Below, in pieces: positions 30,643 to 58,651 of a stretch of DNA of 64,000 bases; within the stretch, counting starts at the first letter, position 1; every line of letters starts with the position of its first letter. The translations under genes were made by a program, and so were the position numbers. Location: the IMG/VR virus record IMGVR_UViG_3300021137_000001, positions 62,001 to 126,000 of that record; one strand, written 5' to 3'. The notes beneath the pieces were generated by a model. The model did not search any database, was not told where the DNA came from, and saw nothing but the letters and a program-made list of their open reading frames with translations.

Positions 30643-31095
30643 ATGTCAGCAAACGGAATTTCAACATTAGCATCAAAACAGCTTAAACAAGAAGGCAAAC
30701 TTGCTATTGCAGAAGCTAAACGTCAAGCCACAACTGTAACTACAAGTGGAACAGGCAAAATTATTGCAGTTACTACATCGCCTGTAGTTAATGCAAATGT
30801 TTCTTTTGCTACTGCATTCTTAACTCAAGCAACTGTTGGTGCATTACTACAAACAACTGGTGCTGTTACTATTGGAACGATATCATCAATTCAATCCGAC
30901 ACACAGCTAACATTAACGGCAAATGCCGCAAGTAATCAAAGCACAATTGCATATAACTTCAATGCAGTTAACAATGGATACAGAACATTAAACACAGCAA
31001 ACATTGATATACTACCAACCAAATATTTTGGTAATGCTATAGTGGATAATATAATCGATGGTAATGTACTAATAACTGGGCGTCCGTGGCAATAA
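30643..31095 (+). CDS. Putative virion protein
   Basis: Thr/Ala-rich; TAAATA upstream; ends GRPW. Confidence 0.5.
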   Translation: MSANGISTLASKQLKQEGKLAIAEAKRQATTVTTSGTGKIIAVTTSPVVNANVSFATAFLTQATVGALLQTTGAVTIGTISSIQSDTQLTLTANAASNQSTIAYNFNAVNNGYRTLNTANIDILPTKYFGNAIVDNIIDGNVLITGRPWQ

Positions 31096-31160
31096 TTGCC
31101 AAAACAGTTGACGGCGGTTGCATTTGCTGTTACGCTGTATATTAACATAGAAACTAACTT

Positions 31161-31475
31161 ATGATATTTGGATTATTAATTCTCGCTGTTGCATTGTTTA
31201 TATCAGCGGTAGCAGCCTTTTACTCGATTGCAGGGCTTTCTGCAATATTTGCCGCGGCAGTAACGCCTATTATCATTATGGGCTTGGCATTAGAGATTGG
31301 TAAAATTGCTGCAACTGTTTGGTTGCACAAATATTGGCATCGTGTTGCTGTACAATTCAAACTATACCTTGTACCTGCTATATTAGTCTTAATGCTAATA
31401 ACATCAATGGGTATATTTGGATTCTTATCAAAAGCACACATGGACCAATCTGTGCCGGCCGGTACTTGGGCATAG
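31161..31475 (+). pseudogene. Truncated 5' paralog of the membrane protein at 36238
   Basis: Aligns with the first ~100 aa of 36238 (KIAATVWLHKYWHR, SMGIFG), then stops. Confidence 0.75.
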
Positions 31476-31562
31476 CAAGTTTACCTAACCAAAACTGTTG
31501 ACAAGTATAAACTACCAGCGTATAATTAATTTATCGCTGGTATTTTTATGAGATAAATAAAA

Positions 31563-31702
31563 ATGCAACGCCACTTATGATAGTGACGTCGGATTTAAAT
31601 TGACGCTTGGAATATTGATTCCTTTACTAATGTTAAAATATTAGAACGCCGACCGTAGGTATCTCCTAAAGAGTACTAGCAGAAAGAATGCTAGTATTTT
31701 CT
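31563..31702. ncRNA. Candidate multi-stem structured RNA with terminator-like hairpin
   Basis: GTCGG/CCGAC closing stem, GGAAT/ATTCC, CTAATGTT/AATATTAG, CGCCAC/GTGACG; then AGTACTAGCA/TGCTAGTATT. Confidence 0.45.
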
Positions 31703-31828
31703 TATCCAAAGTATTAGCATTCCTTTATTAATTCATTTATAATATACAGGACTATCAATTATAATAATTTTATTATTTGAGATTAACCACGAAATGAATA
31801 CAATTATTAATTTAAAGGAGAAGTAAAT

Positions 31829-33010
31829 ATGAAGAGAAATATTTTAAAAGCATTAGTGGCCGCAACTTTAGTATTATCGACTATGAATGCAATGGCAGAT
31901 AGTAATGCTGATTTAATTAATGCATTAGTAAATAAAGGAGTTTTGACTCCAGAAGAAGCAACACCCCTAACTAAAGAGCACATGAAGGAAACAAGCGATC
32001 TTAAAAAATCAATTACTGGTAGTATCGATGATCTTCCGATTAAATTCTATGGTACTATCAGAACATTTTTAGATCATGATTCTGCCAATGTGCCAACACA
32101 TCAACCAGATGCTAAAGTAAGCAATTGGATTAGTAAATTTGGTATTAGCTTCAAAGAGCCGATTACTGCAATTGGTGAAGGCTGGGTAGTTAACGGACAA
32201 TATGAAACTAGCTTCCAAAGTGATAATCCTAAATCAGCGGGAACATATATTGGTGATGTACAAAGTACCATTGGTATTGCTTCTAATTCCGTAGATAGTG
32301 CTGCTGAATATAAACTTGACATTGGCCGTAAACCAAATCTTGTTTGGTTGAATATTAGAGAGTTTGGTATTTTCAATGATGATCCTGCATCACCAATGGG
32401 AGAAATCCATGCTCGCCAAGGTATTTACATGAGTAACGGTATATATGCTCAATATAAACCTCAGTTTGTTCAAGGACTAACATTAAGCACAGATTATAGT
32501 CTAAGCGAAAAAGTCGGTACAAGTAATAAATATGCCGCGTCGGCAAGATATGAATGGGACAGATATATTATTTCTGGAATAAGATTTGATGATCATGCTG
32601 GTAACGAATCTAATTTAATTACTGGTGCAGTTAAAATACCCGAACTTAACTCTCGTGTTACTGCTATTTTCAGTGATGACAAACAATCTGGCGCTCCATT
32701 TGCAACAACCGGTTTAGTTACTAAAGGCTATAGTGCGCAATGGGCGTGGAATGCTATGACTAACGATACAGTATTAGTTGGGTATGGTCATAGAGATGAC
32801 GGTGTGAATGCATATACATTAGGCAACGATTACAAATTGAGTAAACGTGCAACAATACAACTACACTATCAACACGTAGAGTCTGATCGCCCAATAGTAT
32901 TCACTACAATGAATGATATTGGTCCATTGTTTGGTACTAACGGCGGCGCCGCAGCAGCAACGGGCACACGTAGAGATCAACTTGCTCTTGGATTAAAATT
33001 CGTATTTTAA
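31829..33010 (+). CDS. Gram-negative outer-membrane porin
   Basis: Signal peptide, LVNKGVLT N-terminal segment, amphipathic beta strands, C-terminal LGLKFVF. Confidence 0.8.
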   Translation: MKRNILKALVAATLVLSTMNAMADSNADLINALVNKGVLTPEEATPLTKEHMKETSDLKKSITGSIDDLPIKFYGTIRTFLDHDSANVPTHQPDAKVSNWISKFGISFKEPITAIGEGWVVNGQYETSFQSDNPKSAGTYIGDVQSTIGIASNSVDSAAEYKLDIGRKPNLVWLNIREFGIFNDDPASPMGEIHARQGIYMSNGIYAQYKPQFVQGLTLSTDYSLSEKVGTSNKYAASARYEWDRYIISGIRFDDHAGNESNLITGAVKIPELNSRVTAIFSDDKQSGAPFATTGLVTKGYSAQWAWNAMTNDTVLVGYGHRDDGVNAYTLGNDYKLSKRATIQLHYQHVESDRPIVFTTMNDIGPLFGTNGGAAAATGTRRDQLALGLKFVF

Positions 33011-33011
33011 T

Positions 33012-33737
33012 ATGTCTAGGCCACTAATATTTGTAGGTAGTCGGAATGATTTCCCTAATTTAGCATTAATAGCTGAACTTAGGGGAATTGAAGTCCTTGG
33101 AATATTAGATCATCACTATTATGGGAACACTGACACAATGTCGAACATTCCTGTAATAGGAGATGAACGCTGGCTATTGGATGTTAGTAATACACAAGCC
33201 CAAAAATGGTTGAAAACTTGCGATTTCTTTCCAGCTAATTGGTACGATGGTTCACAACCATTTAACAAGATTGATATGCTGAAACTAAGACTCGATAGAA
33301 TTAGTATACTCGAACAGTCGGGTGCAAATATTATCAATCTTATTCATCCTAATGCTAGTGTAGATGGTCTAAACAGCAAATACGCTATTAATTTTAAACT
33401 TGGCCGAGGAATTTTAATCGATGATATGTGTTGGATATCCATCAACAATACACAAATTGGTGATTACAGTCAAATTGCTATTGGGGTTGGTATCGGCCAT
33501 AATGCTATCATCGGTAAAAATGTAGCAGTGGCGCCGTGGGTCACCTTGCCGAGATGCAATATAGGCGATAATACAGTAATTGGAATGCATGCCAAAATTG
33601 ATGTCATTGCCGCTTATCGCCCTGGGACACTAACAATCGGTAGTGGTTCTACTGTATGGGCAAATGCATTAATTAGTAAAGATGTTCCAGACAATTCGAT
33701 ATATACTGACAAAGGCCGTATCTTTAAGAAAAGGTAA
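33012..33737 (+). CDS. NeuD/PglD-like hexapeptide-repeat acyltransferase
   Basis: NLIHP, IGHNAIIG, IGDNTVIG left-handed beta-helix repeats. Confidence 0.8.
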   Translation: MSRPLIFVGSRNDFPNLALIAELRGIEVLGILDHHYYGNTDTMSNIPVIGDERWLLDVSNTQAQKWLKTCDFFPANWYDGSQPFNKIDMLKLRLDRISILEQSGANIINLIHPNASVDGLNSKYAINFKLGRGILIDDMCWISINNTQIGDYSQIAIGVGIGHNAIIGKNVAVAPWVTLPRCNIGDNTVIGMHAKIDVIAAYRPGTLTIGSGSTVWANALISKDVPDNSIYTDKGRIFKKR

Positions 33738-33742
33738 TAATA

Positions 33743-35191
33743 ATGAATAATTTTTCTAAATTTCTTTCAAATAACTTTTTGGGTTATGAAAACAAAACAG
33801 CAATAGTAACAGATTCTGAAACCATCTCGTATATTGAGTTAAATCAACATAGCAGACAATTTGCTTCTACACTTAACGATTTAAATGTAGTTGCAGGCGA
33901 CCGAGTTATTATTATGCTCGAAGATTGCATCGAGTGGGTAGTTGCTTGGTTGGCAATCAATCAATTAGGTGCTGTACCAGTACATATAAGTAATAGATTA
34001 TCGACAGAACAACTACCCAATATATTAAAATCTAGTCAGGCAAAAGTAGTTATCTGTGATATTAATATAAAAACATTATCTGAGGTATTTGCAAATCAAC
34101 TCTGTTTAGGTAAAAGCGATATAATGAAAGACAATCAAACGCATAATGAATATTATGATTTTGCCGATGATGAAATTTGTTTCTGGGTACTAACGTCTGG
34201 CACAGGTGGTGCACAAAAAGTCATTGCACATAGACACGCCTCTATAAAACTTACTATAGATAAGATATCAAAGGCATATAAAATAGATAGCACCAGCATA
34301 TTATATTCAATACCTAAATTAAGTTTTATGTTTGGATTCTTTGATATGATGGCCGCACTAGCACAAAATGCCATTGAACATATATCTAATCAAATACCAA
34401 ATCCGGTAGCCATCCGCACAAGAGTGCGTGAATGCACAGCTACTCATTTATTCAGTGTACCTAGTATTTTAGCTATGATAGCAAGATCAACAAATGACCC
34501 ATCTGATGATTTGGCCTCTATTAAGATGTTATTGTGTGGTGGCGAATCGTTGCCGATTGCTGTCGCTACTGATTTTAAATCAAAATTCGGAGTTGATATA
34601 TTAGATGGACACGGCATGTCGGAGGTGCAACATATGGTTATATCGCAAACTCCTGATGATATAATGATGGGTACTATCGGTCGCCCTCTCGAAGGAGTTA
34701 AAATAGAAATCCGCAGACCTGAAGGTACACTATGCGACGTAGGCGAAGTGGGTGAATTATATATTAATGACCCAAGTATTGCATTATGTTATATCAATGA
34801 CTGGGGATTAACTAAAGATACTTTTGTTGGGCGTTGGCTAAAAACTAATGATCTTGCTTATATCAGATCAGATGGTTATTATGTTTTTAGCGCACGTTCC
34901 GGGGACATAGTAAAAATTAACGGTGAAAAAGTATCTTTAGTCGAAGTTGAGAATGTATTGCTAAAACATACTCAAGTCGAAGATTGTGTTATGCTTAAAT
35001 CATCTGATAAAGAAGGATTTACAAAATTAACAGCTCAAATTGTTCCAAAAAAAGATACTGATATATCTGCCGGAGCAATAAGAAAATATCTTAGAGAGAA
35101 TTTAGAATCATATAAAATTCCTAAGTATATTGAGTTTGTTTCTTCTATTAATAAAACAGTTACCGCTAAGAAGATACGGGTAAAAGTATAA
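33743..35191 (+). CDS. AMP-dependent acyl/aryl-CoA ligase
   Basis: TSGTGGAQK P-loop, GHGMSE, TND, KI A10 motif. Confidence 0.88.
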   Translation: MNNFSKFLSNNFLGYENKTAIVTDSETISYIELNQHSRQFASTLNDLNVVAGDRVIIMLEDCIEWVVAWLAINQLGAVPVHISNRLSTEQLPNILKSSQAKVVICDINIKTLSEVFANQLCLGKSDIMKDNQTHNEYYDFADDEICFWVLTSGTGGAQKVIAHRHASIKLTIDKISKAYKIDSTSILYSIPKLSFMFGFFDMMAALAQNAIEHISNQIPNPVAIRTRVRECTATHLFSVPSILAMIARSTNDPSDDLASIKMLLCGGESLPIAVATDFKSKFGVDILDGHGMSEVQHMVISQTPDDIMMGTIGRPLEGVKIEIRRPEGTLCDVGEVGELYINDPSIALCYINDWGLTKDTFVGRWLKTNDLAYIRSDGYYVFSARSGDIVKINGEKVSLVEVENVLLKHTQVEDCVMLKSSDKEGFTKLTAQIVPKKDTDISAGAIRKYLRENLESYKIPKYIEFVSSINKTVTAKKIRVKV

Positions 35192-35613
35192 TGAATATTA
35201 ATTGGAGCACAGATCATACCAAAGACAAATTGCCTTTTTCTTATGAAATAGTAGAAGTTATTGATAGCAAAAAGGTTAATATTAAAATTCATTTAACCGA
35301 CAAATGTATTAATCATTTTGGTATTCTACACGGTGGTATGCATGCGTTGATTATAGATGAAATTGGTATGACTACATTCCAAAAGATATTATATCCAAAT
35401 GACAATTATCTAACATCTAAACTGACAGTTGACTATATTAAACCGTCGAGAAATTTAGAATTATTGGGTGAGGTCGAACTGACAGAACTGACAGATACAG
35501 TGGGCAAAATAACAGTAACTCTAACAAGTACAAATGGAACCATTAGGAGTAAGGGTACTTTGGAATTTCAAGTTAGACAAAAATTTAAAATGGTTGACAA
35601 CGATAAACTATAG
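35191..35613 (+). CDS. PaaI-family hotdog thioesterase
   Basis: NHFGILHGG...IID motif. Confidence 0.88.
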   Translation: MNINWSTDHTKDKLPFSYEIVEVIDSKKVNIKIHLTDKCINHFGILHGGMHALIIDEIGMTTFQKILYPNDNYLTSKLTVDYIKPSRNLELLGEVELTELTDTVGKITVTLTSTNGTIRSKGTLEFQVRQKFKMVDNDKL

Positions 35614-35649
35614 TGTTATGCTTGTAGTTAACTCGATAAATACTTAACT

Positions 35650-36241
35650 ATGAAGAAAGCATGGCTATACATAACAACTAATCTGATCAACGGTAAAAAA
35701 TATATCGGACAGACTACAAGCACACGATCTAACTATGTTGGATCGGGCAATGCTATTATGGCCGCTATTAAAAAATATGGCAGAGAAAACTTTGTTCGTA
35801 CAAACATATTTGAGGGTGAATGGGAATTAGTGGATTTGCTTGAATATGAGTTCATTGAAAAATACGATGCGGTTAATTCGTTATTGTATTACAATCAAAA
35901 ACCTGGTGGACACACAGGCACACAGCGACATATCTAGAAAGATAATGAGTGAGAAAGCGACTGGTAGAAAAGCATCGGAAGAGTCAAAGCAACAACGCTC
36001 AACAAGAATGAAAGGTACAGGTAATCATTTTTTCAATAAAGCACATACAGAAGATAGTATTAACAAGATTAAAGAAAAACGAGCACAACAAGTAATCACC
36101 GAAGAATCTAATAAAAAACGATCAGAAAAAATTAAAAGTTTACCTAAATTTCAATGTACTAATTGTGGCGGATGGTATTTCAACAGAAATCTTATTCAAT
36201 ATCATAATGAAAAATGTAAAAAAGCAAGGATAATTCAATGA
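35650..36241 (+). pseudogene. Frameshifted GIY-YIG homing endonuclease
   Basis: Catalytic domain 35650-35937 (KKYIGQ, YVGSG) and NUMOD3/Zn tail in a different frame; shift near 35915-35925. Confidence 0.75.
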
Positions 36242-37842
36242 TATTTGCTATAATAATTTTATTAACCGCACTTCTGTTATCAAGTGTGGCTGCAGTTTAT
36301 TCTGTTACAGGATTAATTGCTATATTCCCGGGATCAGTATGGGCCATTATTATTATGGGTGGCACACTCGAAGTTTCAAAAATTGCCGCAACTGTTTGGT
36401 TGCACAAATATTGGCATAGAGCCACGATACAGTTCAAACTTTATCTAGTACCAGCTATTGTAGTATTAATGATTATAACTTCGATGGGTATTTTTGGATA
36501 TTTGTCGGCTTCTCATGTATCACAATCGGCATCAGTTACTGATATCACAGCACAAGTACAAATATTTGACGAAAAAATAACAACTGAACGTGCTAACATC
36601 GATGCAAACAAAAAAGCATTAACTCAAATGGATGCGCAAGTAGATCAATTACTTGGTCGTACAACTGATGACAAAGGTGCAACTAAAGCCGCACAATTAC
36701 GTAAGAGTCAATCAAAAGAACGCAAGGCATTACAAGATGATATTGCTAGATCACAAAAGAACATTGTAGCTATACAAGCAGAACGTACTCCGATTGCATC
36801 ACAAGCACGTAAGGCAACTGCCGATGTTGGACCAGTTTTATACATAGCGGCACTTATCTACGGCGACAATCCAGATGCTAACTTACTTGAACGTGCTGTA
36901 CGTTGGGTAATTATATTGCTAGTGTTTGTATTTGACCCACTTGCTATTGTATTAATACTTGCCGCAGACCAAACGTTTATATGGATAAAAGAAGATAAGC
37001 AAAAGAAGAAAGATGACGAGCCTGCATACGAAGCAGATGATAGTCCGTTAACTGATGAACAGATAGAAACTATTAAAGAAGCATCTGGAGTCGAACAAGA
37101 CCAAACTATGGGCCAAACATTGTTTGATACAGAAGAAGAGTTTTTCGCTCGCGGCAGAGAAATAGCAAAAGAATTAGACACACAATCATATATGGATAAG
37201 CCGTGGACGTGGATGAAAAATTCAGAAGGTCCAATTGGATTAGTTCCACAACAAGAAGAAATAACTACTGCCGACATCTCACCAGACGAACTATATGATT
37301 ATATAGACGAAGGACGTAAAGAAGATCCAGAAACAGATAGTGCTAAACAAGACTTAGATAATGCTATTGGTTTAATTGCAGAAATGCAGACTAAATTAGA
37401 TACATTGCAAGCAGAACATGATGCAAAACACGCAGAGCTCGAGCAGATTAAATCTGTTGATCCAGTTATGCTTAAAGATCATTTAGGCAATCCAATAACA
37501 TTATACTATCCACCAGCCCAACAGGTTACTGCACCAGATTTATCTATTAATGCTGAATTAACTGGTAATAGTGTTAATGCAGGGTTTGGTATAGCGTTTC
37601 CAAAAACTCCAGTTAAAGGTGATTTATACTTAAGAGTTGATTACTTACCGAGCAAACTATACAAGTGGAATGACATTAAATGGATTGATGTAGATAAAGC
37701 TACCGATATATATTCGTATGATAAAGAATACATTAAACACCTAGTAACTAAATTAGCATCGGGCGAATATGATCCCGAAGAGCTTACACTATCGGAACAA
37801 GAACAAATTCAAAAGTATGTAGATGACAGCAAACAAACTTAA
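36238..37842 (+). CDS. Multi-pass membrane protein with coiled coils
   Basis: Three N-terminal TM helices, coiled coil, VFDPLA TM segment, acidic tail. Confidence 0.75.
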   Translation: MIFAIIILLTALLLSSVAAVYSVTGLIAIFPGSVWAIIIMGGTLEVSKIAATVWLHKYWHRATIQFKLYLVPAIVVLMIITSMGIFGYLSASHVSQSASVTDITAQVQIFDEKITTERANIDANKKALTQMDAQVDQLLGRTTDDKGATKAAQLRKSQSKERKALQDDIARSQKNIVAIQAERTPIASQARKATADVGPVLYIAALIYGDNPDANLLERAVRWVIILLVFVFDPLAIVLILAADQTFIWIKEDKQKKKDDEPAYEADDSPLTDEQIETIKEASGVEQDQTMGQTLFDTEEEFFARGREIAKELDTQSYMDKPWTWMKNSEGPIGLVPQQEEITTADISPDELYDYIDEGRKEDPETDSAKQDLDNAIGLIAEMQTKLDTLQAEHDAKHAELEQIKSVDPVMLKDHLGNPITLYYPPAQQVTAPDLSINAELTGNSVNAGFGIAFPKTPVKGDLYLRVDYLPSKLYKWNDIKWIDVDKATDIYSYDKEYIKHLVTKLASGEYDPEELTLSEQEQIQKYVDDSKQT

Positions 37843-37895: not shown

Positions 37896-38132
37896 ATGGC
37901 AAATCATGAATCAATGGTAAAAGGCACTACAGTTTACGTTAAGAACGATAACGTAGAACAAGCAATGCGTAAGTTTAAAAAGAACATACAGGACAGTGGT
38001 CTAATCTTAGATCTACGTGCTCGTGAATCTTACGAAAAGCCAACACTTAAACGCAAACGTAAAGCGGCAGCGGCAAAACAACGTTGGAAAAAGAAATTAT
38101 CTAGCCAAATGCTTCCAGCAAAACTTTATTAA
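37896..38132 (+). CDS. rpsU: Ribosomal protein bS21
   Basis: AMRKFKK...RESYEKPTLKRKRKAAAAKQR. Confidence 0.9.
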   Translation: MANHESMVKGTTVYVKNDNVEQAMRKFKKNIQDSGLILDLRARESYEKPTLKRKRKAAAAKQRWKKKLSSQMLPAKLY

Positions 38133-38195: not shown

Positions 38196-38253
38196 GTAGA
38201 TGCCTGATTAGGGTCTACGGCTATTACTTGCTTTTTAAAAGGAGAAATATATG
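38196..38253 (+). promoter_or_regulatory. ROSE-like RNA thermometer candidate in the dnaK 5' UTR
   Basis: GTAGA..TCTAC hairpin, then CTTGCT pairing with the SD AGGAG around a bulged G. Confidence 0.55.
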
Positions 38254-40167
38254 AGCAAAAATATCGTTCTAGGAATCGACCTCGGAACTACAAATAGTTG
38301 CGTCGCAATTTATGAAAATAACAAACCCCGTATAATTGAAAATAATGAAGGCGCACGTACTACACCATCAATCGTTGCTTATGGCGATGAGATTATTGTT
38401 GGCGCAAGTGCTAAACGTCAGTCAGTTACCAATCCAAAGAACACAATTTACGCAAGCAAACGACTTATTGGTCGCAAGTTTGACGAAGAAGCAGTACAAA
38501 AAGACATTGGCTTAATGCCATACAGTATCGTTAAGAACGTTAACGGTGATGCATGGGTAGAAGTTAACGGAGAGAAATTAGCACCTCCACAAATCTCAGC
38601 AGAAGTATTGCGCAAAATGAAATCAACCGCAGAAGACTATTTGGGTTATGCAGTAACGCAAGCAGTTATTACAGTACCAGCTTACTTCAATGATGCACAA
38701 CGTCAAGCAACTAAAGATGCAGGTCGTATTGCAGGCTTAGAAGTATTGCGTATTATTAACGAACCAACTGCAGCGGCATTAGCATTTGGTTGTGATAAAG
38801 GTGATAAAAAAGATCGCAAGATTGCTGTATATGACTTAGGTGGTGGTACATTTGACATTAGTATTATTGAAATTAGTGATGTAGATGGAGAGAAACAGTT
38901 TGAAGTACTTTCAACTAATGGCGATACATTCTTAGGTGGTGAAGACTTTGACCAACGTGTAATGGAATACTTAATCAGCGAGTTTAAGAAAGACTCTGGT
39001 ATTGATATTACTAAAGATATACTTGCACTACAACGCTTAAAAGAAGCCGCAGAGAAAGCAAAGATTGAGTTATCAAGCTCAACGCAAACAGAAGTAAATC
39101 TTCCATACATTACTGCTGACGCAACTGGTCCTAAGCATTTAGTTGTAAAACTTACCCGTGCTAAGTTCGAGAGTTTAGTTGAAGAACTAATTAAACGTTC
39201 AATTGATCCATGTAAGATTGCAGTTAAAGATTCTGGCATTAAAGTTAGCGACATTGATGATGTTATTCTTGTTGGCGGGCAAACACGTATGCCTAAAGTA
39301 CAAGAAGCTGTTGAAGCATTCTTTGGCAAAGCACCACGCAAAGACGTTAACCCAGATGAAGCAGTTGCAGTGGGTGCGGCAATTCAGGGTGCAGTGCTAG
39401 GTGGTGACAAAACAGACGTATTATTGCTTGATGTAACACCATTATCACTGGGAATTGAAACAATGGGTGGTATTATGACTAAGTTAATTAAGAAAAATAC
39501 AACTATCCCAACTAAAGCAAGCCAAACATTCTCTACAGCAGAGGATAATCAACCAGCTGTTACTGTTATGGTAGCACAAGGTGAGCGTGAATTTGTTAAA
39601 GACAACAAAGTACTTGGGCAGTTTAATTTAGAAGGTATCGCTCCAGCAATGCGCGGTGCTCCACAAATTGAAATTACACTAGACATTGATGCTAATGGTA
39701 TCTTAAAAGTAAGTGCTAAAGATAAAGCAACTGGCAAAGAAAACAAGATTACTATTAAAGCAAACAGTGGACTTACTGAAGCTGAAATTGAAGCAATGGT
39801 ACATGATGCAGAAGTTAATGCAGAAGCAGATACTAAGGCACGTGTAGTAGTCGAAGCAAAGAACGCGGCAGAAGCGCAAATCAATACAGTTAACAAAAAT
39901 CTTAAAGAACACGGCGATAAAATTACTGCTGAACAAAAGATTGAAATCGAAACTGCTATTACTGCGGCAGAAGCAACGTACACATCAGATGATGCAGAAG
40001 CAATTACTGCGGCAGTTGGTAAGGTATTTGAAGTTGCTAAACCATTGTTTGAAATTACTCAAGCACAAGAGTCGGCAACAGTTGAGCCAGGTGCGCAAAC
40101 AGAAACAGCGGCACAAGAAGGTGTTGTTGATGCAGAGTTTACGGAAGTTGATAAGGAGGCGAAATAA
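38251..40167 (+). CDS. dnaK: Hsp70 chaperone DnaK
   Basis: [32 protein letters not shown]. Confidence 0.98.
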
Positions 40168-40598
40168 TGCCAACAGTAGTGACCCCACCTGACATACGTA
40201 GATTTGCAGTAGGCTTTGAGAGTATTTTTATTAACTTAAATCGTACTGCTGGTACATTAAATGCAACTAACTATCCACCATACAATATTGTACGTTATAG
40301 TGAAACTGCATATACTGTTGAAATTGCAGTGGCTGGCTTTGCAGAAGATGAGCTCGATGTTGAAGTAATTAATCATGAGCTTGTTGTACACGGTGCAAGC
40401 AAGATAGTTGATGATCCAAATGTTGAATATATACATCGTGGCATTGCAACACGTAACTTTGTTCGTAGTTTTGCACTAGCAGAGAACGTTGAAGTAAAAG
40501 GTGCAGTTGTAAAGAATGGAATACTAACAGTAATGTTAGAGCATATCATTCCCGAAACTGCCAAGCCAAGAAAGGTTGCAATTTCCTTTCAACCGTAG
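40167..40598 (+). CDS. Small heat-shock protein (IbpA-like)
   Basis: YPPYNI, AVAGF, HRGIA, NGILTV. Confidence 0.93.
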   Translation: MPTVVTPPDIRRFAVGFESIFINLNRTAGTLNATNYPPYNIVRYSETAYTVEIAVAGFAEDELDVEVINHELVVHGASKIVDDPNVEYIHRGIATRNFVRSFALAENVEVKGAVVKNGILTVMLEHIIPETAKPRKVAISFQP

Positions 40599-40968: not shown

Positions 40969-41031
40969 TTAAGTCAGTTTAATAGGTTAAATTGACAGTA
41001 TGTGATAAATATCTATACAAGGGATATTTAT

Positions 41032-41721
41032 ATGTATACAGGATATATTTACATTACTACTAATTTAATTAACAGCCGAGCATATATTGGTAAAAAAAAT
41101 AAATCGACTTTAGATTATTCTTATTATGGATCTGGTACTGTTTTAAAGACAGCAATTAAAAAATATGGTAAAGAAAATTTTAATATCAAAGTATTATATT
41201 GGGCGCAATCAGTAGAAGAACTTGATCTTAAAGAAATCGAATTAATAGAATTATATAGTAAAACTGTTAATTTGTATAATATTGCTAAAGGTGGCACAGG
41301 TGGCGATACGCTAACTAATCACCCAGATCTAAAACAGATACGAGATAAGCAAATTATCGGACTAACGAATTGGCATCATAATATGTCCGAGGATGAAAGA
41401 TCCGAGCACGGAAAAAAAATAAGCAATGCAAAAAAGAATAAATCTAATGGGCACACTGGATTAACTCATAATGCTGCCACAAAAGAAAAAATGTCGCAAG
41501 CATCAAAAGATTATACTAAAACACCAGAATGGAAACTTGCTCATGCTGTTGCCGCTGCAAAACGAAAAAATGTTCCGTTGACAGCAAAATATAAATCTGT
41601 TATAATAGATAATATAGAATACGAATCAGTTGGGCATGCAATGATCGCATTAAATATAAAACATCGAGCAACATTTTATAAATTGATTAAACAACAAAAA
41701 CTACAGGTTGTATACAAATGA
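41032..41721 (+). mobile_element. GIY-YIG (Seg-like) homing endonuclease
   Basis: GYIYITTN...YIG, YYGSG, YNIAKGGTGG. Confidence 0.88.
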
Positions 41722-55293: not shown

Positions 55294-55369
55294 GGGTCGA
55301 TAACTCACTCGGCGAGAGTACTGTGCTCATAACGCAGAAGGCAGGGATCATAACCCTGGCGACCCACCA
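55294..55369 (+). tRNA. tRNA-Met/Ile2 (CAT) with atypical T-loop
   Basis: Cloverleaf, loop CTCATAA, CCA; T-loop ATCATAA. Confidence 0.75.
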
Positions 55370-55374
55370 ACAAA

Positions 55375-55452
55375 GCGTCCGTAGCTCATCTGGACTAGAG
55401 CATGGGATTTCTACTCCCAGGGTAGCTGGTTCGAATCCAGCCGGGCGCACCA
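55375..55452 (+). tRNA. tRNA-Arg (TCT)
   Basis: TGGGA-TTTCTAC-TCCCA, GGTTCGAATCC, CCA. Confidence 0.92.
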
Positions 55453-55473
55453 CTTTTTATATAAGGAAACACA

Positions 55474-55665
55474 ATGAGAACAAAGTCAGAATTTGATATT
55501 GCAATGGAAGAATTTTTAGCCAACGGTGGCGAAGTAAAACAAATAGCACGTGGCGTACAAAGTGAAACAGCAACAACAAACTTCTGGGGCGCACCAAAGA
55601 AAAAAGCCGCAGTAGAAGCAGTAAATGAGTTAGGCGCAACAGGTATTGACGTAATAGAAGAATAA
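55474..55665 (+). CDS. Small hypothetical protein
   Basis: AAGGA SD; EEFLANGGEVKQI motif. Confidence 0.65.
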   Translation: MRTKSEFDIAMEEFLANGGEVKQIARGVQSETATTNFWGAPKKKAAVEAVNELGATGIDVIEE

Positions 55666-55722
55666 TAATATCAGTTCAAAAATAAAATATAAATATATTA
55701 GTAATAATGGAGGTAACTCGAC

Positions 55723-56370
55723 TTGCACAATCCTGTAGAAAAACCAACTTGGTTATATAAACCTATCGATGATATCCCTGAATTGAATAAAATTCAAAAG
55801 GAATGTTTTCGAATCTATTCGGCTGTAAAGAAAGATATATGCAAAGATGTTGGCTGGGCCATTGCTGGAATAGAATTAGATATAATGAAAAAACTTGCAC
55901 CAAATTATATTAATTTTTTAAAAAAATTAGGGTTATACGAGATTTATGCCGGTACAGCATTTTCTGCTAGTATAGGGATACAAAAATATCCTTGTCCTGT
56001 ACACGTTGATTGTAAAGACTGGCGCCAATTACCATTTTCACTTAATATACCAGTTGTTGGATGTGAGGATAGTTATACTGTTTTTTATGATGTTGATGAA
56101 TCATCCGATCCTGCAAACGCATTACCAGATACATGGGATAATAATTATATGAAAATGAATAAAATTGAAGGAGTGGTCGGATATTCCGAAAAAACAGCAA
56201 AAGAAATTGGCAGAATGCCTGCTACCCAACCTGCATTTGTAAACATTGGTATTCCTCACCGCCCTGTGACAAATCATACTAATCTAAGATTAGTTATGTT
56301 ATCGAGATTTACACCTGACATATTTGATTATGTAAATAATGACATATTTAAAACTAAATTATCAGAATAA
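55723..56370 (+). CDS. Putative 2OG-Fe(II)/cupin-like protein
   Basis: HVD...SLNIP...H pattern. Confidence 0.5.
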   Translation: MHNPVEKPTWLYKPIDDIPELNKIQKECFRIYSAVKKDICKDVGWAIAGIELDIMKKLAPNYINFLKKLGLYEIYAGTAFSASIGIQKYPCPVHVDCKDWRQLPFSLNIPVVGCEDSYTVFYDVDESSDPANALPDTWDNNYMKMNKIEGVVGYSEKTAKEIGRMPATQPAFVNIGIPHRPVTNHTNLRLVMLSRFTPDIFDYVNNDIFKTKLSE

Positions 56371-56411
56371 TACCAGTTCAAAAATAAATGATAAATAATT
56401 AGATAAAGTGC

Positions 56412-56440
56412 TTGACAAGAGTATAAATAGAATATATAAT
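56412..56440 (+). promoter_or_regulatory. Promoter of the tRNA array (sigma70 with nested late box)
   Basis: TTGACA-N17-TATAAT with TATAAATA inside the spacer. Confidence 0.85.
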
Positions 56441-56474
56441 AGTTGTATAAGTTAATAAGGAAGTGAGAAAACAA

Positions 56475-56600
56475 ATGTTCAAATCGTTACATCAGTTTAA
56501 GATATCAACACTCGTGCAGTTATGCGGCGTGTCTTCTTATTGGTCAGCGATTGAGATGAATACGAGTGATCGCGCACCGAATAGAAAGGGTTTAAGTTAA
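56475..56600 (+). CDS. Putative attenuator leader peptide (41 aa, all 20 amino acids)
   Basis: MFKSLHQFKISTLVQLCGVSSYWSAIEMNTSDRAPNRKGLS*; last codons form the antiterminator 5' arm. Confidence 0.65.
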   Translation: MFKSLHQFKISTLVQLCGVSSYWSAIEMNTSDRAPNRKGLS

Positions 56601-56661
56601 CGTTTATTATTATATATGAATTTTTACTTAAACCTTAGAATTAAAAACTCTAAGGTTTTTT
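56587..56661 (+). terminator. Antiterminator/terminator switch ahead of the tRNA array
   Basis: 56587-56597 pairs with 56626-56636; alternative terminator CCTTAGA/TCTAAGG plus T6. Confidence 0.75.
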
Positions 56662-56775
56662 GCTTTTAGCAGTAAGTGTTTTGGAAACGAGGTCCATAAC
56701 TAAACACTATAAAGATTGTAAGTTGAACGGGCGGAACTAGGGATGAAGCACCTTGTGTGGTGTGAAAAATCTAGC

Positions 56776-56856
56776 ATAATAAAGTACATTAATCGGCAAC
56801 TAGGTCCCACGCAATGTGGATTATGTCAGAGGCGAGTAATTAGTGTGCTTTATTAT
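56776..56856 (+). ncRNA. Long-stem small RNA unit 1
   Basis: 18-bp closing stem with two G-U pairs. Confidence 0.5.
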
Positions 56857-56900
56857 ACGCATTCACATGAGTGCGGTACACAATTTGTAGTGCATTTTGT

Positions 56901-56975
56901 CAGGGTATAGCTCAGCCTGGCCAGAGTCCTCGGTTTGGAACCGAGTTGTCGTAAGTTCGAATCTTACTACCCTGA
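56901..56975 (+). tRNA. tRNA-Pro (TGG), no encoded CCA
   Basis: CTCGG-TTTGGAA-CCGAG; acceptor stem extended by a flanking inverted repeat. Confidence 0.88.
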
Positions 56976-57080
56976 CAAAATGCATTACTTAAAAAGAGGT
57001 TAACACATACGGTAATTGGTAGTATAATAGCTACTTGAAGTTAAGTAATACGCTCTTTAACAGTTTGGAAGTTTTACAAT

Positions 57081-57153
57081 ATCGCATTCATCTAGTGGCC
57101 TAAGATACTGCCCTTTCACGGCAGGTACACGGATTCGAATTCCGTATGCGATA
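57081..57153 (+). tRNA. tRNA-Glu (TTC), no encoded CCA
   Basis: CTGCC-CTTTCAC-GGCAG; ATCGCAT/ATGCGAT acceptor. Confidence 0.88.
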
Positions 57154-57182
57154 CACATAGTAAATTTTGTATAAATACAAGT

Positions 57183-57794
57183 ATGACATATTACTACTTG
57201 TATCAAATCACTAATTTAGTGAATGCAAAAATTTACGTTGGAGTACATAAAACGAAATCATTAGATGACGGATATATGGGCTCTGGAAAAATTATTCAAT
57301 GTGCAATTAAAAAACACGGAATTGATAATTTTAAAAAAGACATACTTGAGACTTTTGACACATCAGAAGCTATGTATGCACGTGAGAAAGAAATAGTAAC
57401 AGATCAGTTTCTGTTACGCGAAGATACCTATAACTTACGTAGAGGCGGAACTGGCGGATTTGATTATATAAACAAGCAACCATGGGTGCATACTACAAAC
57501 AGGATAATAGGAGATATAAAGAAAAGTAAAACATTAAAAGGTAGACGCCCTTCTGAAAATACGTTAATAGCAGTAAGGTTAATGCATCAAGACGGAAGAG
57601 TAAAGTATGATACGTTTACTGGTAAACAGCATACCATCGAAACTAAACAAAAAATGTCAATTGCGAAAAAAGGAAAAGGATGCAATCAGCATAACAGTCA
57701 ATTCGGTACTATATGGATAACGGATGGTATAAGTAACAAAAAAATAAAGAAAGATGTTACTATTCCAGAAGGATGGAATAGAGGTAGAAGTTAA
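57183..57794 (+). mobile_element. GIY-YIG (SegB-like) homing endonuclease in the tRNA array
   Basis: YLYQITN...IYVGVH, YMGSG, YNLRRGG. Confidence 0.88.
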
Positions 57795-57798
57795 GACC

Positions 57799-57904
57799 AT
57801 ATTAAAACATATTTGACCAAGTCGGTGTTCCTTGATGCTAGGATTAGAGCGGACAGCAGTCCGCGAGATGTAGTTGCGATATTACAGCAAGTGTGTTTTA
57901 ATAT
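57799..57904 (+). ncRNA. Long-stem small RNA unit 2
   Basis: 17-bp closing stem with G-U pairs; internal GCGGAC/GTCCGC hairpin. Confidence 0.5.
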
Positions 57905-57915
57905 AGTAAGTCTAT

Positions 57916-57989
57916 TGGCTCATGGTGTAGTGGTAGCACAACAGGTTTTGATCCTGTTAGTTGTAGTTCGATTCTACATGGGCCTGCCA
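57916..57989 (+). tRNA. tRNA-Gln (TTG)
   Basis: ACAGG-TTTTGAT-CCTGT, CCA. Confidence 0.9.
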
Positions 57990-58058
57990 AGTTTTAATGG
58001 AGTGGAAATACCATACTATCAGTCCGTTATGTATAAATACATATATAGGAGAACTGAT

Positions 58059-58457
58059 ATGTTTAAGAACAGTAAGAAACAAGGTGACGCTGGATTAGGG
58101 CAAGCAATAGCATATTTTACAATGAAAGGATATGATGTTGCGTTGCCACTAACAGATAGCGCAGACTGGGATATGATTGTTGAGATAGATGGTGAACTTA
58201 AAAGAGTCCAAGTTAAAACATCTAAACAACTATCTAAAACGGGTATAATGATGTTTAATGCTAATGTAAATGGCGGCAACATGTCATTTAATAAAAAACC
58301 TAAACTTATACCAGAACAACAATGGGATTTATTGTTCTTACATCACTTAGTGACAAATAAGCAAGCATTGATTCCTAAAGAAGCACTAACTACAAAAGGT
58401 CAAGTGAACTTAGGTAGTAGTCAATGTAAGTATAAAGATTTTATGATTAATGGATGA
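58059..58457 (+). mobile_element. PD-(D/E)XK endonuclease (I-Ssp6803I-like family)
   Basis: KQGD..., WDMIVE..RVQVKT; AGGAG SD; stop overlaps tRNA-Tyr. Confidence 0.75.
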
Positions 58458-58537
58458 GCGGCGCAGTTGGAGAGGCGCGGGAGACTGTAAATCTCTTTTC
58501 CCTGAATGAGTAGGTTCGAATCTTACCTCATCCACCA
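58452..58537 (+). tRNA. tRNA-Tyr (GTA)
   Basis: GGAGA-CTGTAAA-TCTCT, long variable arm, CCA. Confidence 0.9.
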
Positions 58538-58542
58538 ATTTA

Positions 58543-58619
58543 GTTGTGTCGTCGGTTCGAAGCCAACCTGTAATCAAGCGAAATAGCAGTTACAGTAGTT
58601 TACTTGGTAAAACAACAAC
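58543..58619 (+). ncRNA. Circularly permuted, anticodon-less tRNA-like element
   Basis: T-arm and 3' acceptor strand precede the 5' acceptor strand and D-arm; ends pair GTTGT/ACAAC. Confidence 0.65.
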
Positions 58620-58651
58620 AATTTTTGTAGTAAATTTAATAGGAGCAACAC

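What the first reader, a model, noticed from the sequence alone, without database searches (positions are those of the whole stretch)
31161..36560. 4.7-kb cargo cassette inside a membrane-protein gene with about 100 codons duplicated and recoded
Seen: 31161-31475 and 36238 onward are diverged copies of the same ~100-aa N-terminus. Between them lie a structured RNA, porin, acyltransferase, acyl-CoA ligase, PaaI thioesterase and a frameshifted GIY-YIG gene coupled to the replacement start. Inference: endonuclease-driven delivery of metabolic cargo, with the endonuclease now decaying.
Basis: partly seen in the sequence, partly recalled or inferred. Interest (0 to 1): 0.6.

Follow-up and report, generated by a model that had tools for sequence, protein, structure and literature searches.

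The report
Endonuclease-linked insert splits phage membrane gene
In a 329-kb freshwater jumbo phage, a 5.1-kb block (a new riboswitch-like RNA, four metabolic genes, a freshly broken homing-endonuclease gene and a foreign copy of the first ~100 codons) sits inside a conserved membrane-protein gene, leaving a rare, datable footprint of how homing endonucleases and gene cassettes reshuffle phage genomes.

Summary
ORF 31161-31475 (104 aa) and the start of 36238-37842 (534 aa) share 66/97 residues. Neither copy was recoded in place. They are two natural alleles of the first ~100 codons of a conserved jumbo-phage membrane gene. The short copy (A) is 98/99 identical to the N-termini of intact 481-567-aa genes elsewhere. 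The long gene's N-terminus (B) is 95-98% identical to intact genes that carry a homing-endonuclease gene (HEG) fused to their start by the same ATGA overlap. Lake metagenomes hold the uninterrupted A gene, so the insert is 5,087-5,096 bp (about 31463-36549). The window's HEG is 97-100% identical in DNA to an intact 197-aa orthologue, apart from a 2-nt deletion. The cargo is not the endonuclease's own. It is the tail of a six-gene operon (TctA to thioesterase) that lies upstream of this gene in many relatives without that HEG, and here it is bracketed by two copies of an 18-nt promoter motif. Best model: an endonuclease break at the A/B boundary, repaired homologously on the right and illegitimately on the left. 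The "structured RNA" is an undescribed riboswitch-like family with strong covariation. Verdict: a new variant of known HEG and cassette mosaicism.

The parts
30643..31095 (+). Upstream neighbour gene (150 aa, no known domain). It marks the native position of the membrane gene's start.
   Evidence: Homologues precede the membrane gene in relatives (L005, L014, L017, L094). In the ERZ1426723 contig, 91-aa and 150-aa genes lie upstream of the HEG and the 534-aa gene.
31161..31475 (+). Remnant of the A-type allele of the membrane gene: codons 1-101 (31161-31463), then 3 unrelated codons and a stop. It encodes three predicted membrane helices.
   Evidence: 98/99 identical to the N-termini of intact 481-567-aa proteins P0272-P0280, and departs from them after G101. 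About 90% DNA identity to L091 up to ~31455, then it collapses. Groups with L091 and L097 in the N-terminal tree.
31463..31496 (+). Left (illegitimate) junction. A scrambled patch lies between the end of A-type homology and the start of homology to the operon's upstream region.
   Evidence: Alignments with L091 and L088. Joints 31462->36550 and 31453->36550 appear in contigs of the uninterrupted gene.
31497..31541 (+). Left copy of the 18-nt promoter motif GTTGACAAGTATAAACTA. It carries a perfect TTGACA-17-TATAAT, and the -10 box lies inside an inverted repeat (CCAGCG at 31515-31520, CGCTGG at 31535-31540).
   Evidence: 12/12 promoter match. The motif occurs only twice in 64 kb, against 0.15 expected. 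L088 keeps the stem through a double change (CCAGCA/TGCTGG).
31561..31701 (+). Riboswitch-like structured leader RNA (four hairpins P1-P4 plus a conserved CGUCG/YGACG helix). An ATAAATA box lies just upstream at 31553-31559.
   Evidence: Covariance model R1 gives 116.7 bits, E 3e-24, and this is the only copy in the genome. The family has covariation. Not in Rfam 15.
31686..31722 (+). Terminator-like hairpin (15-bp stem, T-rich tail) that overlaps the 3' end of the RNA motif. Possible expression platform.
   Evidence: Conserved in L084, L088, L089 and L178.
31749..31799 (+). Deletion scar. Degenerate first codons of TctA are fused to the last 5 codons of the 285-aa gene, so about 2.1 kb of the ancestral operon is missing.
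   Evidence: blastn to L088:12-302 and L088:2451-6265. Endpoint alignment. No TctA anywhere in the genome.
31829..33010 (+). Porin (Porin_4) with a signal peptide.
   Evidence: Pfam E 2.8e-07, above the cut-off. 50-92% identical homologues sit in the same operon elsewhere.
33012..33737 (+). Left-handed beta-helix (hexapeptide) acyltransferase.
   Evidence: Pfam Hexapep E 5e-12.
33743..35191 (+). Adenylate-forming acyl/aryl-CoA ligase. Sources name its relatives benzoate-CoA ligase.
   Evidence: Pfam AMP-binding E 3e-59 plus AMP-binding_C. Homologues.
35191..35613 (+). Hot-dog fold (4HBT / PaaI-type) thioesterase. Its last codons are formed by the right promoter copy.
   Evidence: Pfam 4HBT E 5.9e-06. 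Sequence.
35593..35622 (+). Right copy of the 18-nt promoter motif (GTTGACAACGATAAACTA; TTGACA-17-TATGCT). This is the membrane gene's own promoter.
   Evidence: The same motif precedes the gene in L091 and the HEG-gene pair in L200.
35650..36241 (+). Free-standing GIY-YIG/NUMOD3 homing-endonuclease gene, frameshifted by a 2-nt (CA) deletion at about 35918. Its stop overlaps the membrane gene's ATG.
   Evidence: PHROG 314 E 9e-23 and NUMOD3 E 7e-07. 97-100% DNA identity to the intact 197-aa gene L200:9411-10004, which has GGCACACACAG where the window has GGCACACAG. 'CA put in behind 35918' in other runs.
36238..36549 (+). B-type allele of codons 1-104, the replacement N-terminus that travels with the HEG.
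   Evidence: 95-98% identical to P0152-P0162. Only 66% identical to A-type genes. Groups with L010 in the N-terminal tree, SH-aLRT 96.
36550..37842 (+). Rest of the membrane gene (DUF4407-like: coiled-coil region, two more membrane helices, C-terminal domain). This part is not differentiated between A and B carriers.
   Evidence: Residues 105-260 group with L091 and L097, SH-aLRT 99. Identity to L091 rises at ~36540-36553. Membrane segments. PF14362 is on record for homologues.

Best explanation
The locus is a young recombinant at a hot spot: the 5' end of a conserved jumbo-phage membrane-protein gene. Three mobile things meet there.

1. An A/B dimorphism of codons 1 to about 100. The B form is linked to a free-standing homing-endonuclease gene (HEG) inserted between the gene's promoter and its start codon. 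The HEG is translationally coupled to the gene by an ATGA overlap.

2. A promoter-bracketed metabolic cassette. It consists of a riboswitch-like leader, TctA, a 285-aa gene, a porin, an acyltransferase, a CoA ligase and a thioesterase. In many relatives it sits between that promoter and the gene.

3. In the window phage, an A-type gene interrupted right after codon 101 by 5.09 kb. The insert runs: promoter copy, leader, the last four cassette genes, second promoter copy, HEG, B-type codons 1-104. The B codons restore a full-length gene.

Shown:
- The two allele classes and their linkage to the HEG.
- The existence of the uninterrupted 'empty-site' A gene.
- The insert's limits.
- The independence of cassette and HEG.
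- The recency of the event. The A remnant is 98/99 identical to intact genes, and the HEG differs from an intact orthologue by a 2-nt deletion.

Inferred mechanism: an A-type phage that lacked the cassette was co-infecting a cell with a phage carrying cassette + HEG + B. The endonuclease cut the A allele at or next to the A/B boundary. The right end had good homology and primed copying of the donor leftwards through the B codons, the HEG and the cassette. The left end had no homologous partner, because the recipient has different upstream genes. It was therefore joined illegitimately just upstream of the cassette's promoter. That left the A-type 101 codons as a stump. The HEG then lost its frame.
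For: Allele classes and discordant ancestry:
- The short copy is 96% identical to L091's N-terminus and 98/99 identical to P0272-P0280.
- The long gene's first 100 residues are 95-98% identical to P0152-P0162 (B) but 66% identical to L091.
- Residues 105-260 of the long gene group with L091 and L097 (SH-aLRT 99). Its N-terminus groups with L010 (SH-aLRT 96).
- B carriers P0152, P0160 and P0170 are 88-96% identical to A carrier L091 after residue 105, but 66-67% before it.

HEG linkage:
- L200 and L201 have promoter, intact 197-aa HEG, then a B-type gene with the same 4-nt overlap. Their DNA is 97-100% identical to window 35636-36234.
- L203 and the ERZ1426723 contig hold a different 231-aa gene, 28% identical in alignment to the window's HEG and with no domain hit on record, in the same place before a B-type gene.
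- L010 has an HNH gene there. L010 is 100% identical in DNA to L012 from about codon 92 onward, but only 55-70% identical before it.

Coincident breakpoints:
- A homology ends at 31462/31463.
- The A/B dimorphism ends at codon about 100 (P0158 reads ...SQSAS|AGDVAAQV against A-type ...DQTVP|AGDVAAQV).
- Empty-site contigs join 31462 to 36550 with 10 letters between.

Cassette independence:
- Cassette present without this HEG.
- The 18-nt promoter motif occurs only at 31497 and 35593.
- TctA and the 285-aa gene are deleted here.

Recipient synteny: 150-aa-gene homologues precede the membrane gene in L005, L014, L017, L094 and the ERZ1426723 contig; L013 has another small gene there.

Precedent: HEGs sit at boundaries of genetic exchange and next to cargo (PMC10448857). 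SegB-dependent segmental amplification with microhomology at the repeat junction (PMC13096335).
Against: - No contig other than the window's own lineage shows the proposed donor arrangement (cassette, then this HEG, then a B-type gene). L204 has cassette plus B without the HEG. L200 has HEG plus B without the cassette.
- The cleavage site of this endonuclease is unknown. The coincidence of breakpoints could instead reflect a domain boundary where recombinants are viable.
- The right crossover cannot be placed, because A and B carriers are alike after codon 105.
- The 12-34 nt at the left junction are scrambled, so no clean microhomology can be read.
- The present HEG copy is frameshifted. It cannot be the enzyme that acted unless the frameshift came later.
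Confidence: 0.6

Rival explanations
1. Two or more separate events with no causal role for the endonuclease. The cassette entered (or was inherited) by recombination between promoter repeats. The HEG and the B codons arrived later by ordinary homing, using the promoter and codons after 100 as homology arms. The A stump comes from an unrelated illegitimate recombination or replication template switch with an A-type phage.
For: The cassette is bracketed by two copies of the gene's promoter motif, as in the PeSL cassettes of T4-type phages (PMC2839356, PMC4122927). Cassette and HEG occur independently in relatives. The short promoter/5'UTR homology to L200 starts at about 35590, so ordinary homing into a cassette-bearing genome is feasible.
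Against: It needs an extra, unexplained illegitimate event whose endpoint happens to fall within 1-2 codons of the A/B boundary. It must also place an A-type start exactly at the native distance from the 150-aa upstream gene. One aberrant repair explains both.
Confidence: 0.25
2. In-place tandem duplication of the gene's 5' end. The duplication was followed by divergence ('recoding') of one copy and later insertion of genes between the copies.
For: The two copies lie in the same orientation, 5 kb apart, and are 68% identical in protein.
Against: Each copy has near-identical counterparts as the N-terminus of intact single-copy genes in other phages: A at 98/99, B at 95-98%. The divergence therefore predates the event. 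The trees place the copies in different clades.
Confidence: 0.02
3. The 104-aa ORF is a functional stand-alone small membrane protein. On this view it has been kept by selection (for example as a dominant modulator of the full-length protein) rather than being a dead remnant.
For: The ORF is open. It keeps three membrane helices, its native upstream region and 98/99 identity to functional N-termini. The exact product is seen on 7 contigs.
Against: No stand-alone homologue was found outside this phage's own lineage, although the length-limited protein search was never run with the 104-aa query. High identity is equally expected for a very young remnant. The ORF ends in 3 junction-derived codons.
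Confidence: 0.1
4. Chimeric metagenome assembly that joins two phage strains.
For: A-type and B-type strains coexist in the same lakes.
Against: The same structure is assembled independently in several samples and years (L001/L083, L002, G000). A 515-nt contig from another run spans the left junction and an 885-nt contig spans the HEG-gene junction, both without differences.
Confidence: 0.02

Closest known systems
Free-standing homing endonucleases of T4-type phages (Seg and Mob proteins; 'intronless homing' with co-conversion of flanking markers; PMC2988022, PMC2330249, PMC2790892)
   Same: - A GIY-YIG/NUMOD3 gene sits between genes.
- It shows presence/absence polymorphism among close relatives.
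- A diverged stretch of the neighbouring gene is always inherited with the HEG.
- Identity changes sharply at a fixed boundary (L010/L012; window against L091).
   Different: - Here the HEG is placed between a gene's promoter and its start codon, and is translationally coupled to it.
- In this genome the event was not a clean conversion. It left the resident 101 codons as a stump and brought in 4 kb of unrelated genes.
- Cleavage activity and site are untested.
HEG-islands / nuclease genes at boundaries of genetic exchange (Barth, Dunham & Seed 2023, PMC10448857)
   Same: HEGs mark the edges of exchanged segments. Neighbouring 'cargo' genes move with them. In some relatives the membrane gene is flanked by HEGs on both sides (ERZ1426723 contig).
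   Different: The cargo described there is essential core genes, exchanged by homology. Here the passenger is an accessory metabolic operon with its own promoter repeats, and the left junction is non-homologous.
PeSL promoter/stem-loop cassettes that mediate modular shuffling in T4-type phages (PMC2839356, PMC4122927)
   Same: The accessory gene block is bracketed by direct repeats of a promoter motif. The left copy holds a stem-loop kept by a compensatory change. The block is present or absent at the same site in relatives.
   Different: The motif sequence differs from published PeSLs. Only two copies occur in 64 kb. A mini-circle or repeat-mediated excision was not tested.
SegB-driven segmental amplification in phage T6 (PMC13096335)
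   Same: An HEG-dependent rearrangement (tandem repeats of tRNA-Tyr plus segB) with microhomology at the repeat junction.
   Different: That case is a tandem amplification of the HEG's own neighbourhood under selection by a defence system. This case is a single heterologous insertion with a partial, allelic duplication.
Riboswitches and other cis-regulatory leader RNAs (for the RNA at 31561-31701)
   Same: - A conserved multi-hairpin 5' leader with covariation.
- A coherent set of downstream genes: TctA, TctC, DctP, CoA ligase, acyltransferase and dioxygenases.
- A terminator-like or Shine-Dalgarno-proximal 3' end.
- A tandem arrangement in some loci.
   Different: There is no match to any Rfam 15 family. 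The ligand is unknown. So far it is seen only in viral or metagenomic contigs. A protein-binding leader is not excluded.

Membership tests
GIY-YIG homing endonuclease (free-standing, Seg-like) | GIY-YIG catalytic domain | tested here: met
   PHROG 314 'homing endonuclease' E 8.9e-23 over residues 1-91. The Pfam GIY-YIG (19.2 bits) and SegE_GIY-YIG (21.9 bits) hits are below their cut-offs of 22.6 and 25. 42% identical to the intact 239-aa GIY-YIG gene at 41002-41721.
GIY-YIG homing endonuclease (free-standing, Seg-like) | C-terminal DNA-binding module (NUMOD3 or zinc-finger-like) | tested here: met
   NUMOD3 at 29.5 bits, above the 20.4 cut-off. A C-x2-C ... H-x3-C tail is kept in L200.
GIY-YIG homing endonuclease (free-standing, Seg-like) | One intact reading frame | tested here: not met
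   A 2-nt deletion relative to L200 at about 35918 splits the gene into two frames. The frameshift is confirmed in another run (X5), and the unbroken form is seen in X14 and X15.
GIY-YIG homing endonuclease (free-standing, Seg-like) | Presence/absence polymorphism at one site among close relatives, with a linked diverged flank | tested here: met
   L091 (no HEG, A allele) against L200 (HEG, B allele): residues 1-100 are 66% identical and the rest 89-94%.
GIY-YIG homing endonuclease (free-standing, Seg-like) | Site-specific cleavage of the HEG-less allele and immunity of the HEG-linked allele | not testable with these tools
   Needs the purified enzyme (L200 type) and A/B substrates.
PeSL-type promoter-bracketed mobile cassette | Direct repeats of a promoter (plus stem-loop) motif on both sides of a variable gene block | tested here: met
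   GTTGACAANNATAAACTA occurs only at 31497 and 35593. The stem-loop at the left copy is kept by a compensatory change in L088.
PeSL-type promoter-bracketed mobile cassette | The block is present or absent at the same site in relatives | tested here: met
   Cassette present: L085-87, the ERZ1426842 contig, L097, L120, L204. Cassette absent: L091, L200, L013.
PeSL-type promoter-bracketed mobile cassette | Sequence membership in the published PeSL motif; excision as mini-circles | not tested
   The published consensus was not compared. Circles cannot be seen in contigs.
Riboswitch (new class candidate) | Conserved secondary structure supported by covariation | tested here: met
   23 sequences: 85.5% of cells paired against 29-53% in slid controls, and 112 double-change cells against 10-33. 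P1-P4 fold in nearly every member despite different stem sequences.
Riboswitch (new class candidate) | Position in the 5' leader of functionally related genes | tested here: met
   An ORF starts 97-400 nt downstream in all loci. Products are TctA, TctC, DctP, hexapeptide transferase, AMP-binding ligase, TauD and a hydroxylase.
Riboswitch (new class candidate) | Expression platform | tested here: inconclusive
   A terminator-like hairpin at 31686-31722 overlaps the motif's 3' end and is conserved in L084, L088, L089 and L178. Other members have a Shine-Dalgarno sequence close by. No alternative-pairing analysis was done.
Riboswitch (new class candidate) | Direct ligand binding without protein | not testable with these tools
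   Needs in-line probing or ITC with candidate carboxylates and aromatic acids.
DUF4407-like phage membrane protein | Match to PF14362 and conserved membrane topology | tested here: inconclusive
   PF14362 is on record for several homologues and is a weak hit for the L085 gene. The window protein itself gives only a sub-threshold DUF6650 hit. Membrane segments lie at 1-44, 62-92 and 214-250. Homologues exist in Pelagibacter phage Mosig, XacN1 and others.

The most novel reading that the evidence does not exclude
Two linked readings remain open.

(a) The leader at 31561-31701 is the founding member of a new riboswitch class. With it, freshwater jumbo phages would sense a carboxylate or aromatic-acid metabolite and switch on phage-encoded uptake (porin, TTT and TRAP components) and CoA-activation genes.

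(b) The locus is a natural record of an endonuclease break repaired from one side only. That route would let a homing endonuclease drag several kilobases of non-homologous accessory genes into a genome that lacks any homology upstream of the target.
Probability: 0.35. Interest if true: 0.8.

Novelty: new variant of a known kind. Interest (0 to 1): 0.55.

Why it matters
Homing endonucleases are known to mark the edges of exchanged DNA in phages. Natural examples where donor-type, empty-site and product alleles can all be read are rare. Here all three exist in public data, and the product is young enough that the junctions are still legible. That makes one mechanism directly testable: a break repaired by homology on one side and by end joining on the other, which can carry accessory metabolic genes into an unrelated neighbourhood.

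The cassette itself suggests that freshwater jumbo phages equip their hosts with an outer-membrane channel, carboxylate transporters and a CoA-activation/acyl-transfer pathway. The undescribed structured RNA that heads it in more than 25 contigs is a credible new riboswitch candidate. If it is one, it would be one of the few found through phage genomes.

Tried and rejected
- Near-identical DNA in the INPHARED phage collection: nothing relevant.
- Pattern search for the ligase in IMG/VR: it found only the same phage. The protein word search was needed to find the cassette elsewhere.
- Remnant of the 285-aa gene in 31400-31900 by tblastn: only noise. The DNA comparison showed instead that the leader was kept and TctA plus the 285-aa gene were deleted.
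- First segment analysis with IMG/VR relatives only. It wrongly suggested that the whole long gene might be foreign. Closer metagenome relatives corrected this.
- Local phmmer survey for HEGs upstream of the gene in about 150 loci. It found only L010 (HNH) and the L060/L064 group (GIY-YIG-like), so most relatives have no detectable HEG there. The survey is insensitive, and L147 was excluded for length.
- The 111-aa ORF in the ERZ1426723 contig was considered as a possible second A stump. No DNA is held for it. Similar 107-113-aa genes are ordinary neighbours in L010, L011, L013 and L014, so it is probably not a stump. This stays untested.
- Rfam with permissive thresholds on the window leader and on three other members: no family.
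- Literature search for a described TctC-associated riboswitch: uninformative, because the term matches DNA strings.
- RNAalifold alone missed P3 and P4 because of alignment gaps. They were checked hairpin by hairpin and with a hand-written structure.
- Composition profile: no GC step at the insert's edges, so it does not help to date or source the insert.

Full report
CONTEXT. The window is bases 62001-126000 of a 329,321-bp IMG/VR virus record with direct terminal repeats (contig Ga0214165_1000003). It is a jumbo phage. Genes are dense on one strand and there are 13 tRNA genes. Ribosomal protein S21 and an Hsp70 lie next to the finding. More than 20 freshwater and lake metagenome runs hold the stretch.

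ORF 31161-31475 (104 aa) aligns with the first 97 residues of ORF 36238-37842 (534 aa) at 66/97 identities, E 8e-41. The DNA is about 70-78% identical, with a nearly invariant 45-nt core. These are the only two copies in the genome.

- a Porin_4 porin;
- a hexapeptide acyltransferase;
- an AMP-binding CoA ligase;
- a 4HBT thioesterase;
- a GIY-YIG endonuclease gene split into two frames.

The second endonuclease frame ends in an ATGA overlap with the start of the 534-aa gene.

The structure was assembled independently several times. L001/L083 spans both junctions, and L002 is a further copy. The exact 104-aa product is on 7 contigs. Contigs from another run cross 31100-31512 and 35764-36600 without a single difference.

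2. WHAT THE TWO COPIES ARE.
The 534-aa protein belongs to a family found as one full-length gene in more than 280 related contigs (124 in IMG/VR, 160 in JGI metagenomes). More distant relatives occur in isolated large phages such as Pelagibacter phage Mosig and Xanthomonas phage XacN1. It is usually followed by S21 and Hsp70. In no related locus is the N-terminal homologue a stand-alone gene.

The short copy ('A'):
- It is 96-97% identical to the N-terminus of L091 and L092.
- It is 98/99 identical to intact 481-567-aa proteins P0272-P0280, with which it shares a 90%-identity cluster.
- Those proteins read ...MDQTVPAGDVAAQV. The short ORF reads ...MDQSVPAG, then three unrelated codons and a stop. 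Homology therefore ends after codon 101, at 31463.

The long gene's N-terminus ('B'):
- It is only 65-68% identical to the A-type proteins.
- It is 95-98% identical to another set of intact proteins, P0152-P0162.

After residue 105 the distinction disappears. B carriers P0152, P0160 and P0170 are 88-96% identical to A carrier L091.

The trees say the same. Residues 105-260 of the long gene group with L091 and L097 (SH-aLRT 99). Its first 99 residues group with L010 (SH-aLRT 96). The short copy sits next to L091.

So nothing was recoded in place. Two old alleles of the first ~100 codons circulate in this phage group, and the window holds one of each.

3. THE B ALLELE TRAVELS WITH A HOMING ENDONUCLEASE GENE (HEG).
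- In L200 and L201 the order is tail-fibre-like gene, promoter, intact 197-aa NUMOD3 endonuclease gene, B-type membrane gene. The 4-nt overlap is the same as in the window.
- DNA identity between L200 and window 35636-36234 is 97-100%. The one frame-changing difference is that L200 has GGCACACACAG where the window has GGCACACAG.
- That 2-nt deletion causes the frameshift. It is confirmed in run X5, and the unbroken form is present in runs X14 and X15.
- L203 and the ERZ1426723 contig carry a different 231-aa gene, 28% identical in alignment to the window's HEG and with no domain hit on record, in the same position before a B-type gene.
- L010 carries an HNH gene there. L010 is 100% identical in DNA to the HEG-less L012 from about codon 92 onward, but only 55-70% identical before it.

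The same boundary, next to different endonuclease genes, in independent lineages is the signature of homing with a co-inherited diverged flank. This is established for T4 Seg and Mob genes (PMC2988022, PMC2330249, PMC2790892).

4. THE CARGO IS AN INDEPENDENT CASSETTE.
The protein word search found the ligase and porin at 50-92% identity on other contigs. Their contexts show a six-gene block: TctA, a ~285-aa gene, porin, hexapeptide transferase, ligase, thioesterase.

Cassette without this HEG:
- In the ERZ1426842 contig and L085-L087 the block lies immediately upstream of the intact membrane gene, with no endonuclease gene between.
- L097, L120 and L204 show shorter versions at the same place.

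DNA comparison with L088:
- Window 31486-31777 matches the leader upstream of TctA.
- Window 31796-35621 matches the last 14 nt of the 285-aa gene through the thioesterase.
- TctA and the 285-aa gene were therefore deleted here (scar at about 31779-31799). No TctA exists anywhere in the genome.

Promoter bracket:
- The 18-nt motif GTTGACAANNATAAACTA occurs exactly twice in the 64-kb window, at 31497 and 35593, against 0.15 expected. The two copies bracket the cargo.
- Both copies are the -35 half of strong promoter-like sites.
- The same motif precedes the membrane gene in L091 and the HEG-gene pair in L200.

The cassette therefore sits between two copies of the membrane gene's own promoter. 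This layout is like the PeSL cassettes of T4-type phages (PMC2839356, PMC4122927).

5. THE INSERT AND THE EMPTY SITE.
Contigs from a 2020 lake series carry the uninterrupted A-type gene. Laid on the window they give joints 31462->36550 (10 letters between) and 31453->36550. The window's structure therefore equals an A-type gene plus 5,087-5,096 bp.

The left edge is non-homologous. A scrambled patch at 31463-31496 lies between the end of A homology and the start of homology to the operon's upstream region. The right edge is a homologous transition at about 36540-36553.

The end of the A stump (codon 101) and the end of the A/B dimorphism (codon ~100) coincide within one or two codons.

6. MECHANISM (INFERRED).
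The recipient had the 150-aa gene directly before an A-type membrane gene. Homologues of that 150-aa gene precede the membrane gene in L005, L014, L017, L094 and the ERZ1426723 contig. The donor carried cassette, promoter, HEG and B-type gene. The proposed steps are:
- The endonuclease broke the A allele at the A/B boundary. This gave a right end with immediate homology to the donor.
- The left end had only about 70% identity to the B codons and no homology further upstream.
- Copying from the right end ran through the B codons, the HEG, the cassette and its promoter.
- The product was then sealed to the unresected left end without homology.

This single event explains four facts: the position of the stump at the native distance from the 150-aa gene; the coincidence of breakpoints; the presence of both modules in one insert; and the restored reading frame.

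The event is young. The stump is 98/99 identical to working genes, and the HEG is one 2-nt deletion away from an intact orthologue.

The gaps are:
- The donor arrangement was not found outside this lineage.
- The cleavage site is unknown.
- A multi-step history cannot be excluded. In that history, the cassette arrives by promoter-repeat recombination, the HEG by ordinary homing through the ~60-nt promoter/5'UTR homology seen from about 35590, and the stump by an unrelated illegitimate event.

I put the one-event model at about 0.6 and the multi-step model at about 0.25. In-place duplication with recoding is refuted. Assembly chimera is refuted.

7. THE STRUCTURED RNA.
The leader at 31561-31701 is conserved in L084, L085, L088 and L089. 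A pattern built from two invariant blocks found it in 26 more viral contigs.

Architecture:
- TTGCAACGCC-[P1]-GACGTCGGA-N-TTGACGCYT-[P2]-TTTACT-[P3]-AGAACGCC-N-ACCGT-[P4]-AGC.
- An ATAAATA box lies about 6 nt upstream.

Evidence for structure:
- All four hairpins keep pairing while their sequences change.
- On 23 sequences, 85.5% of cells pair, against 29-53% when partners are slid. There are 112 double-change cells against 10-33.
- No Rfam 15 family matches.

Distribution (covariance model R1):
- One copy in the whole 329-kb genome.
- One more copy ahead of the transferase-ligase pair in L120.
- Tandem copies in L085-L087.

Downstream genes. The first ORF downstream starts 97-400 nt from the motif. 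Its products are:
- TctA (seven loci, by its conserved 423/437-aa length; Pfam-confirmed in L084, L085, L089, L173);
- TctC (three loci);
- DctP (two loci);
- the hexapeptide transferase (four loci);
- an AMP-binding enzyme;
- a TauD dioxygenase;
- an Asp/Asn-hydroxylase-like protein;
- several unknowns.

In the window a 15-bp terminator-like hairpin (31686-31722) overlaps the motif's 3' end.

Conserved structure, a single copy per genome, a coherent transporter and enzyme regulon, tandem forms and a plausible expression platform together make this a good riboswitch candidate. Ligand sensing is untested, and a protein-bound leader remains possible.

8. COMPARISON AND VERDICT.
The endonuclease part is a member of a known kind (free-standing GIY-YIG/NUMOD3 HEGs). 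Its unusual placement is between a promoter and a start codon. In this genome it fails the intact-frame criterion.

The cassette behaves like a PeSL-type module. The combination is a new variant, close to but distinct from HEG-islands (PMC10448857) and SegB-driven amplification (PMC13096335). It comprises an allelic partial duplication of the target, a non-homologous left junction and 4 kb of accessory genes riding along.

Interest is 0.55, carried partly by the RNA family.

Noticed in passing
window 31561-31701 (+); L170-L198, L084-L089, L120:147-281: Undescribed four-hairpin leader RNA family with strong covariation. It is single-copy in this genome and always lies upstream of carboxylate-uptake genes (TctA, TctC, DctP) or acyl-activation and oxygenase genes. 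It has no Rfam match. A riboswitch candidate.
   Followed up: yes
L085:1364-1501 and 1504-1628 (also L086, L087): Two copies of the RNA motif in tandem ahead of TctA. Some known riboswitch classes show the same arrangement.
   Followed up: partly
window 41002-41721 (+): A second, intact 239-aa GIY-YIG endonuclease gene lies downstream of the Hsp70/Hsp20 pair. It is 42% identical to the broken one, so this phage carries several HEGs.
   Followed up: partly
L010:9707-9916 (-) and L010 vs L012, 10001-10600: An HNH endonuclease gene lies directly before the membrane gene in L010. L010 and L012 are 100% identical in DNA from about codon 92 for ~330 nt, but 55-70% identical before it. This is a second, independent N-terminal swap.
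   Followed up: yes
ERZ1426842, ERZ1426723 and L204:4403-5083 (-): Another NUMOD3 endonuclease gene (226 aa, opposite strand) lies between the membrane gene and S21 in several relatives. In ERZ1426723 a 231-aa gene in the HEG position also precedes the membrane gene, so it may be flanked on both sides.
   Followed up: no
window 31959-32040 (porin): In two 2020 lake runs a close relative of the porin has this 80-nt patch replaced by 83 unrelated letters, while the flanks stay about 95% identical. This is a hypervariable segment, possibly a surface loop.
   Followed up: no
L172:2511-2902 (-): A permuted, betaproteobacterial-type tmRNA gene lies on a viral contig that also carries the RNA motif. 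Together with the Porin_4 and TTT-transporter genes, this hints at betaproteobacterial hosts.
   Followed up: no
window 37896-38132, 38251-40167, 40167-40598; L085, L200, L202 downstream: A conserved block of S21, Hsp70, Hsp20, ClpS, a cytidylyltransferase, CsgF/CsgG-like and FecR-like genes follows the membrane gene. A radical-SAM gene on the opposite strand is inserted between S21 and Hsp70 in L091, L200 and L202, but not in the window.
   Followed up: no
window 55294-61356: A cluster of 13 tRNA genes, including two Met (CAT) genes, interspersed with small ORFs.
   Followed up: no
L089:8424-8505: In this relative a tRNA gene, not the membrane gene, follows the thioesterase. The cassette therefore also occurs in another neighbourhood.
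   Followed up: no
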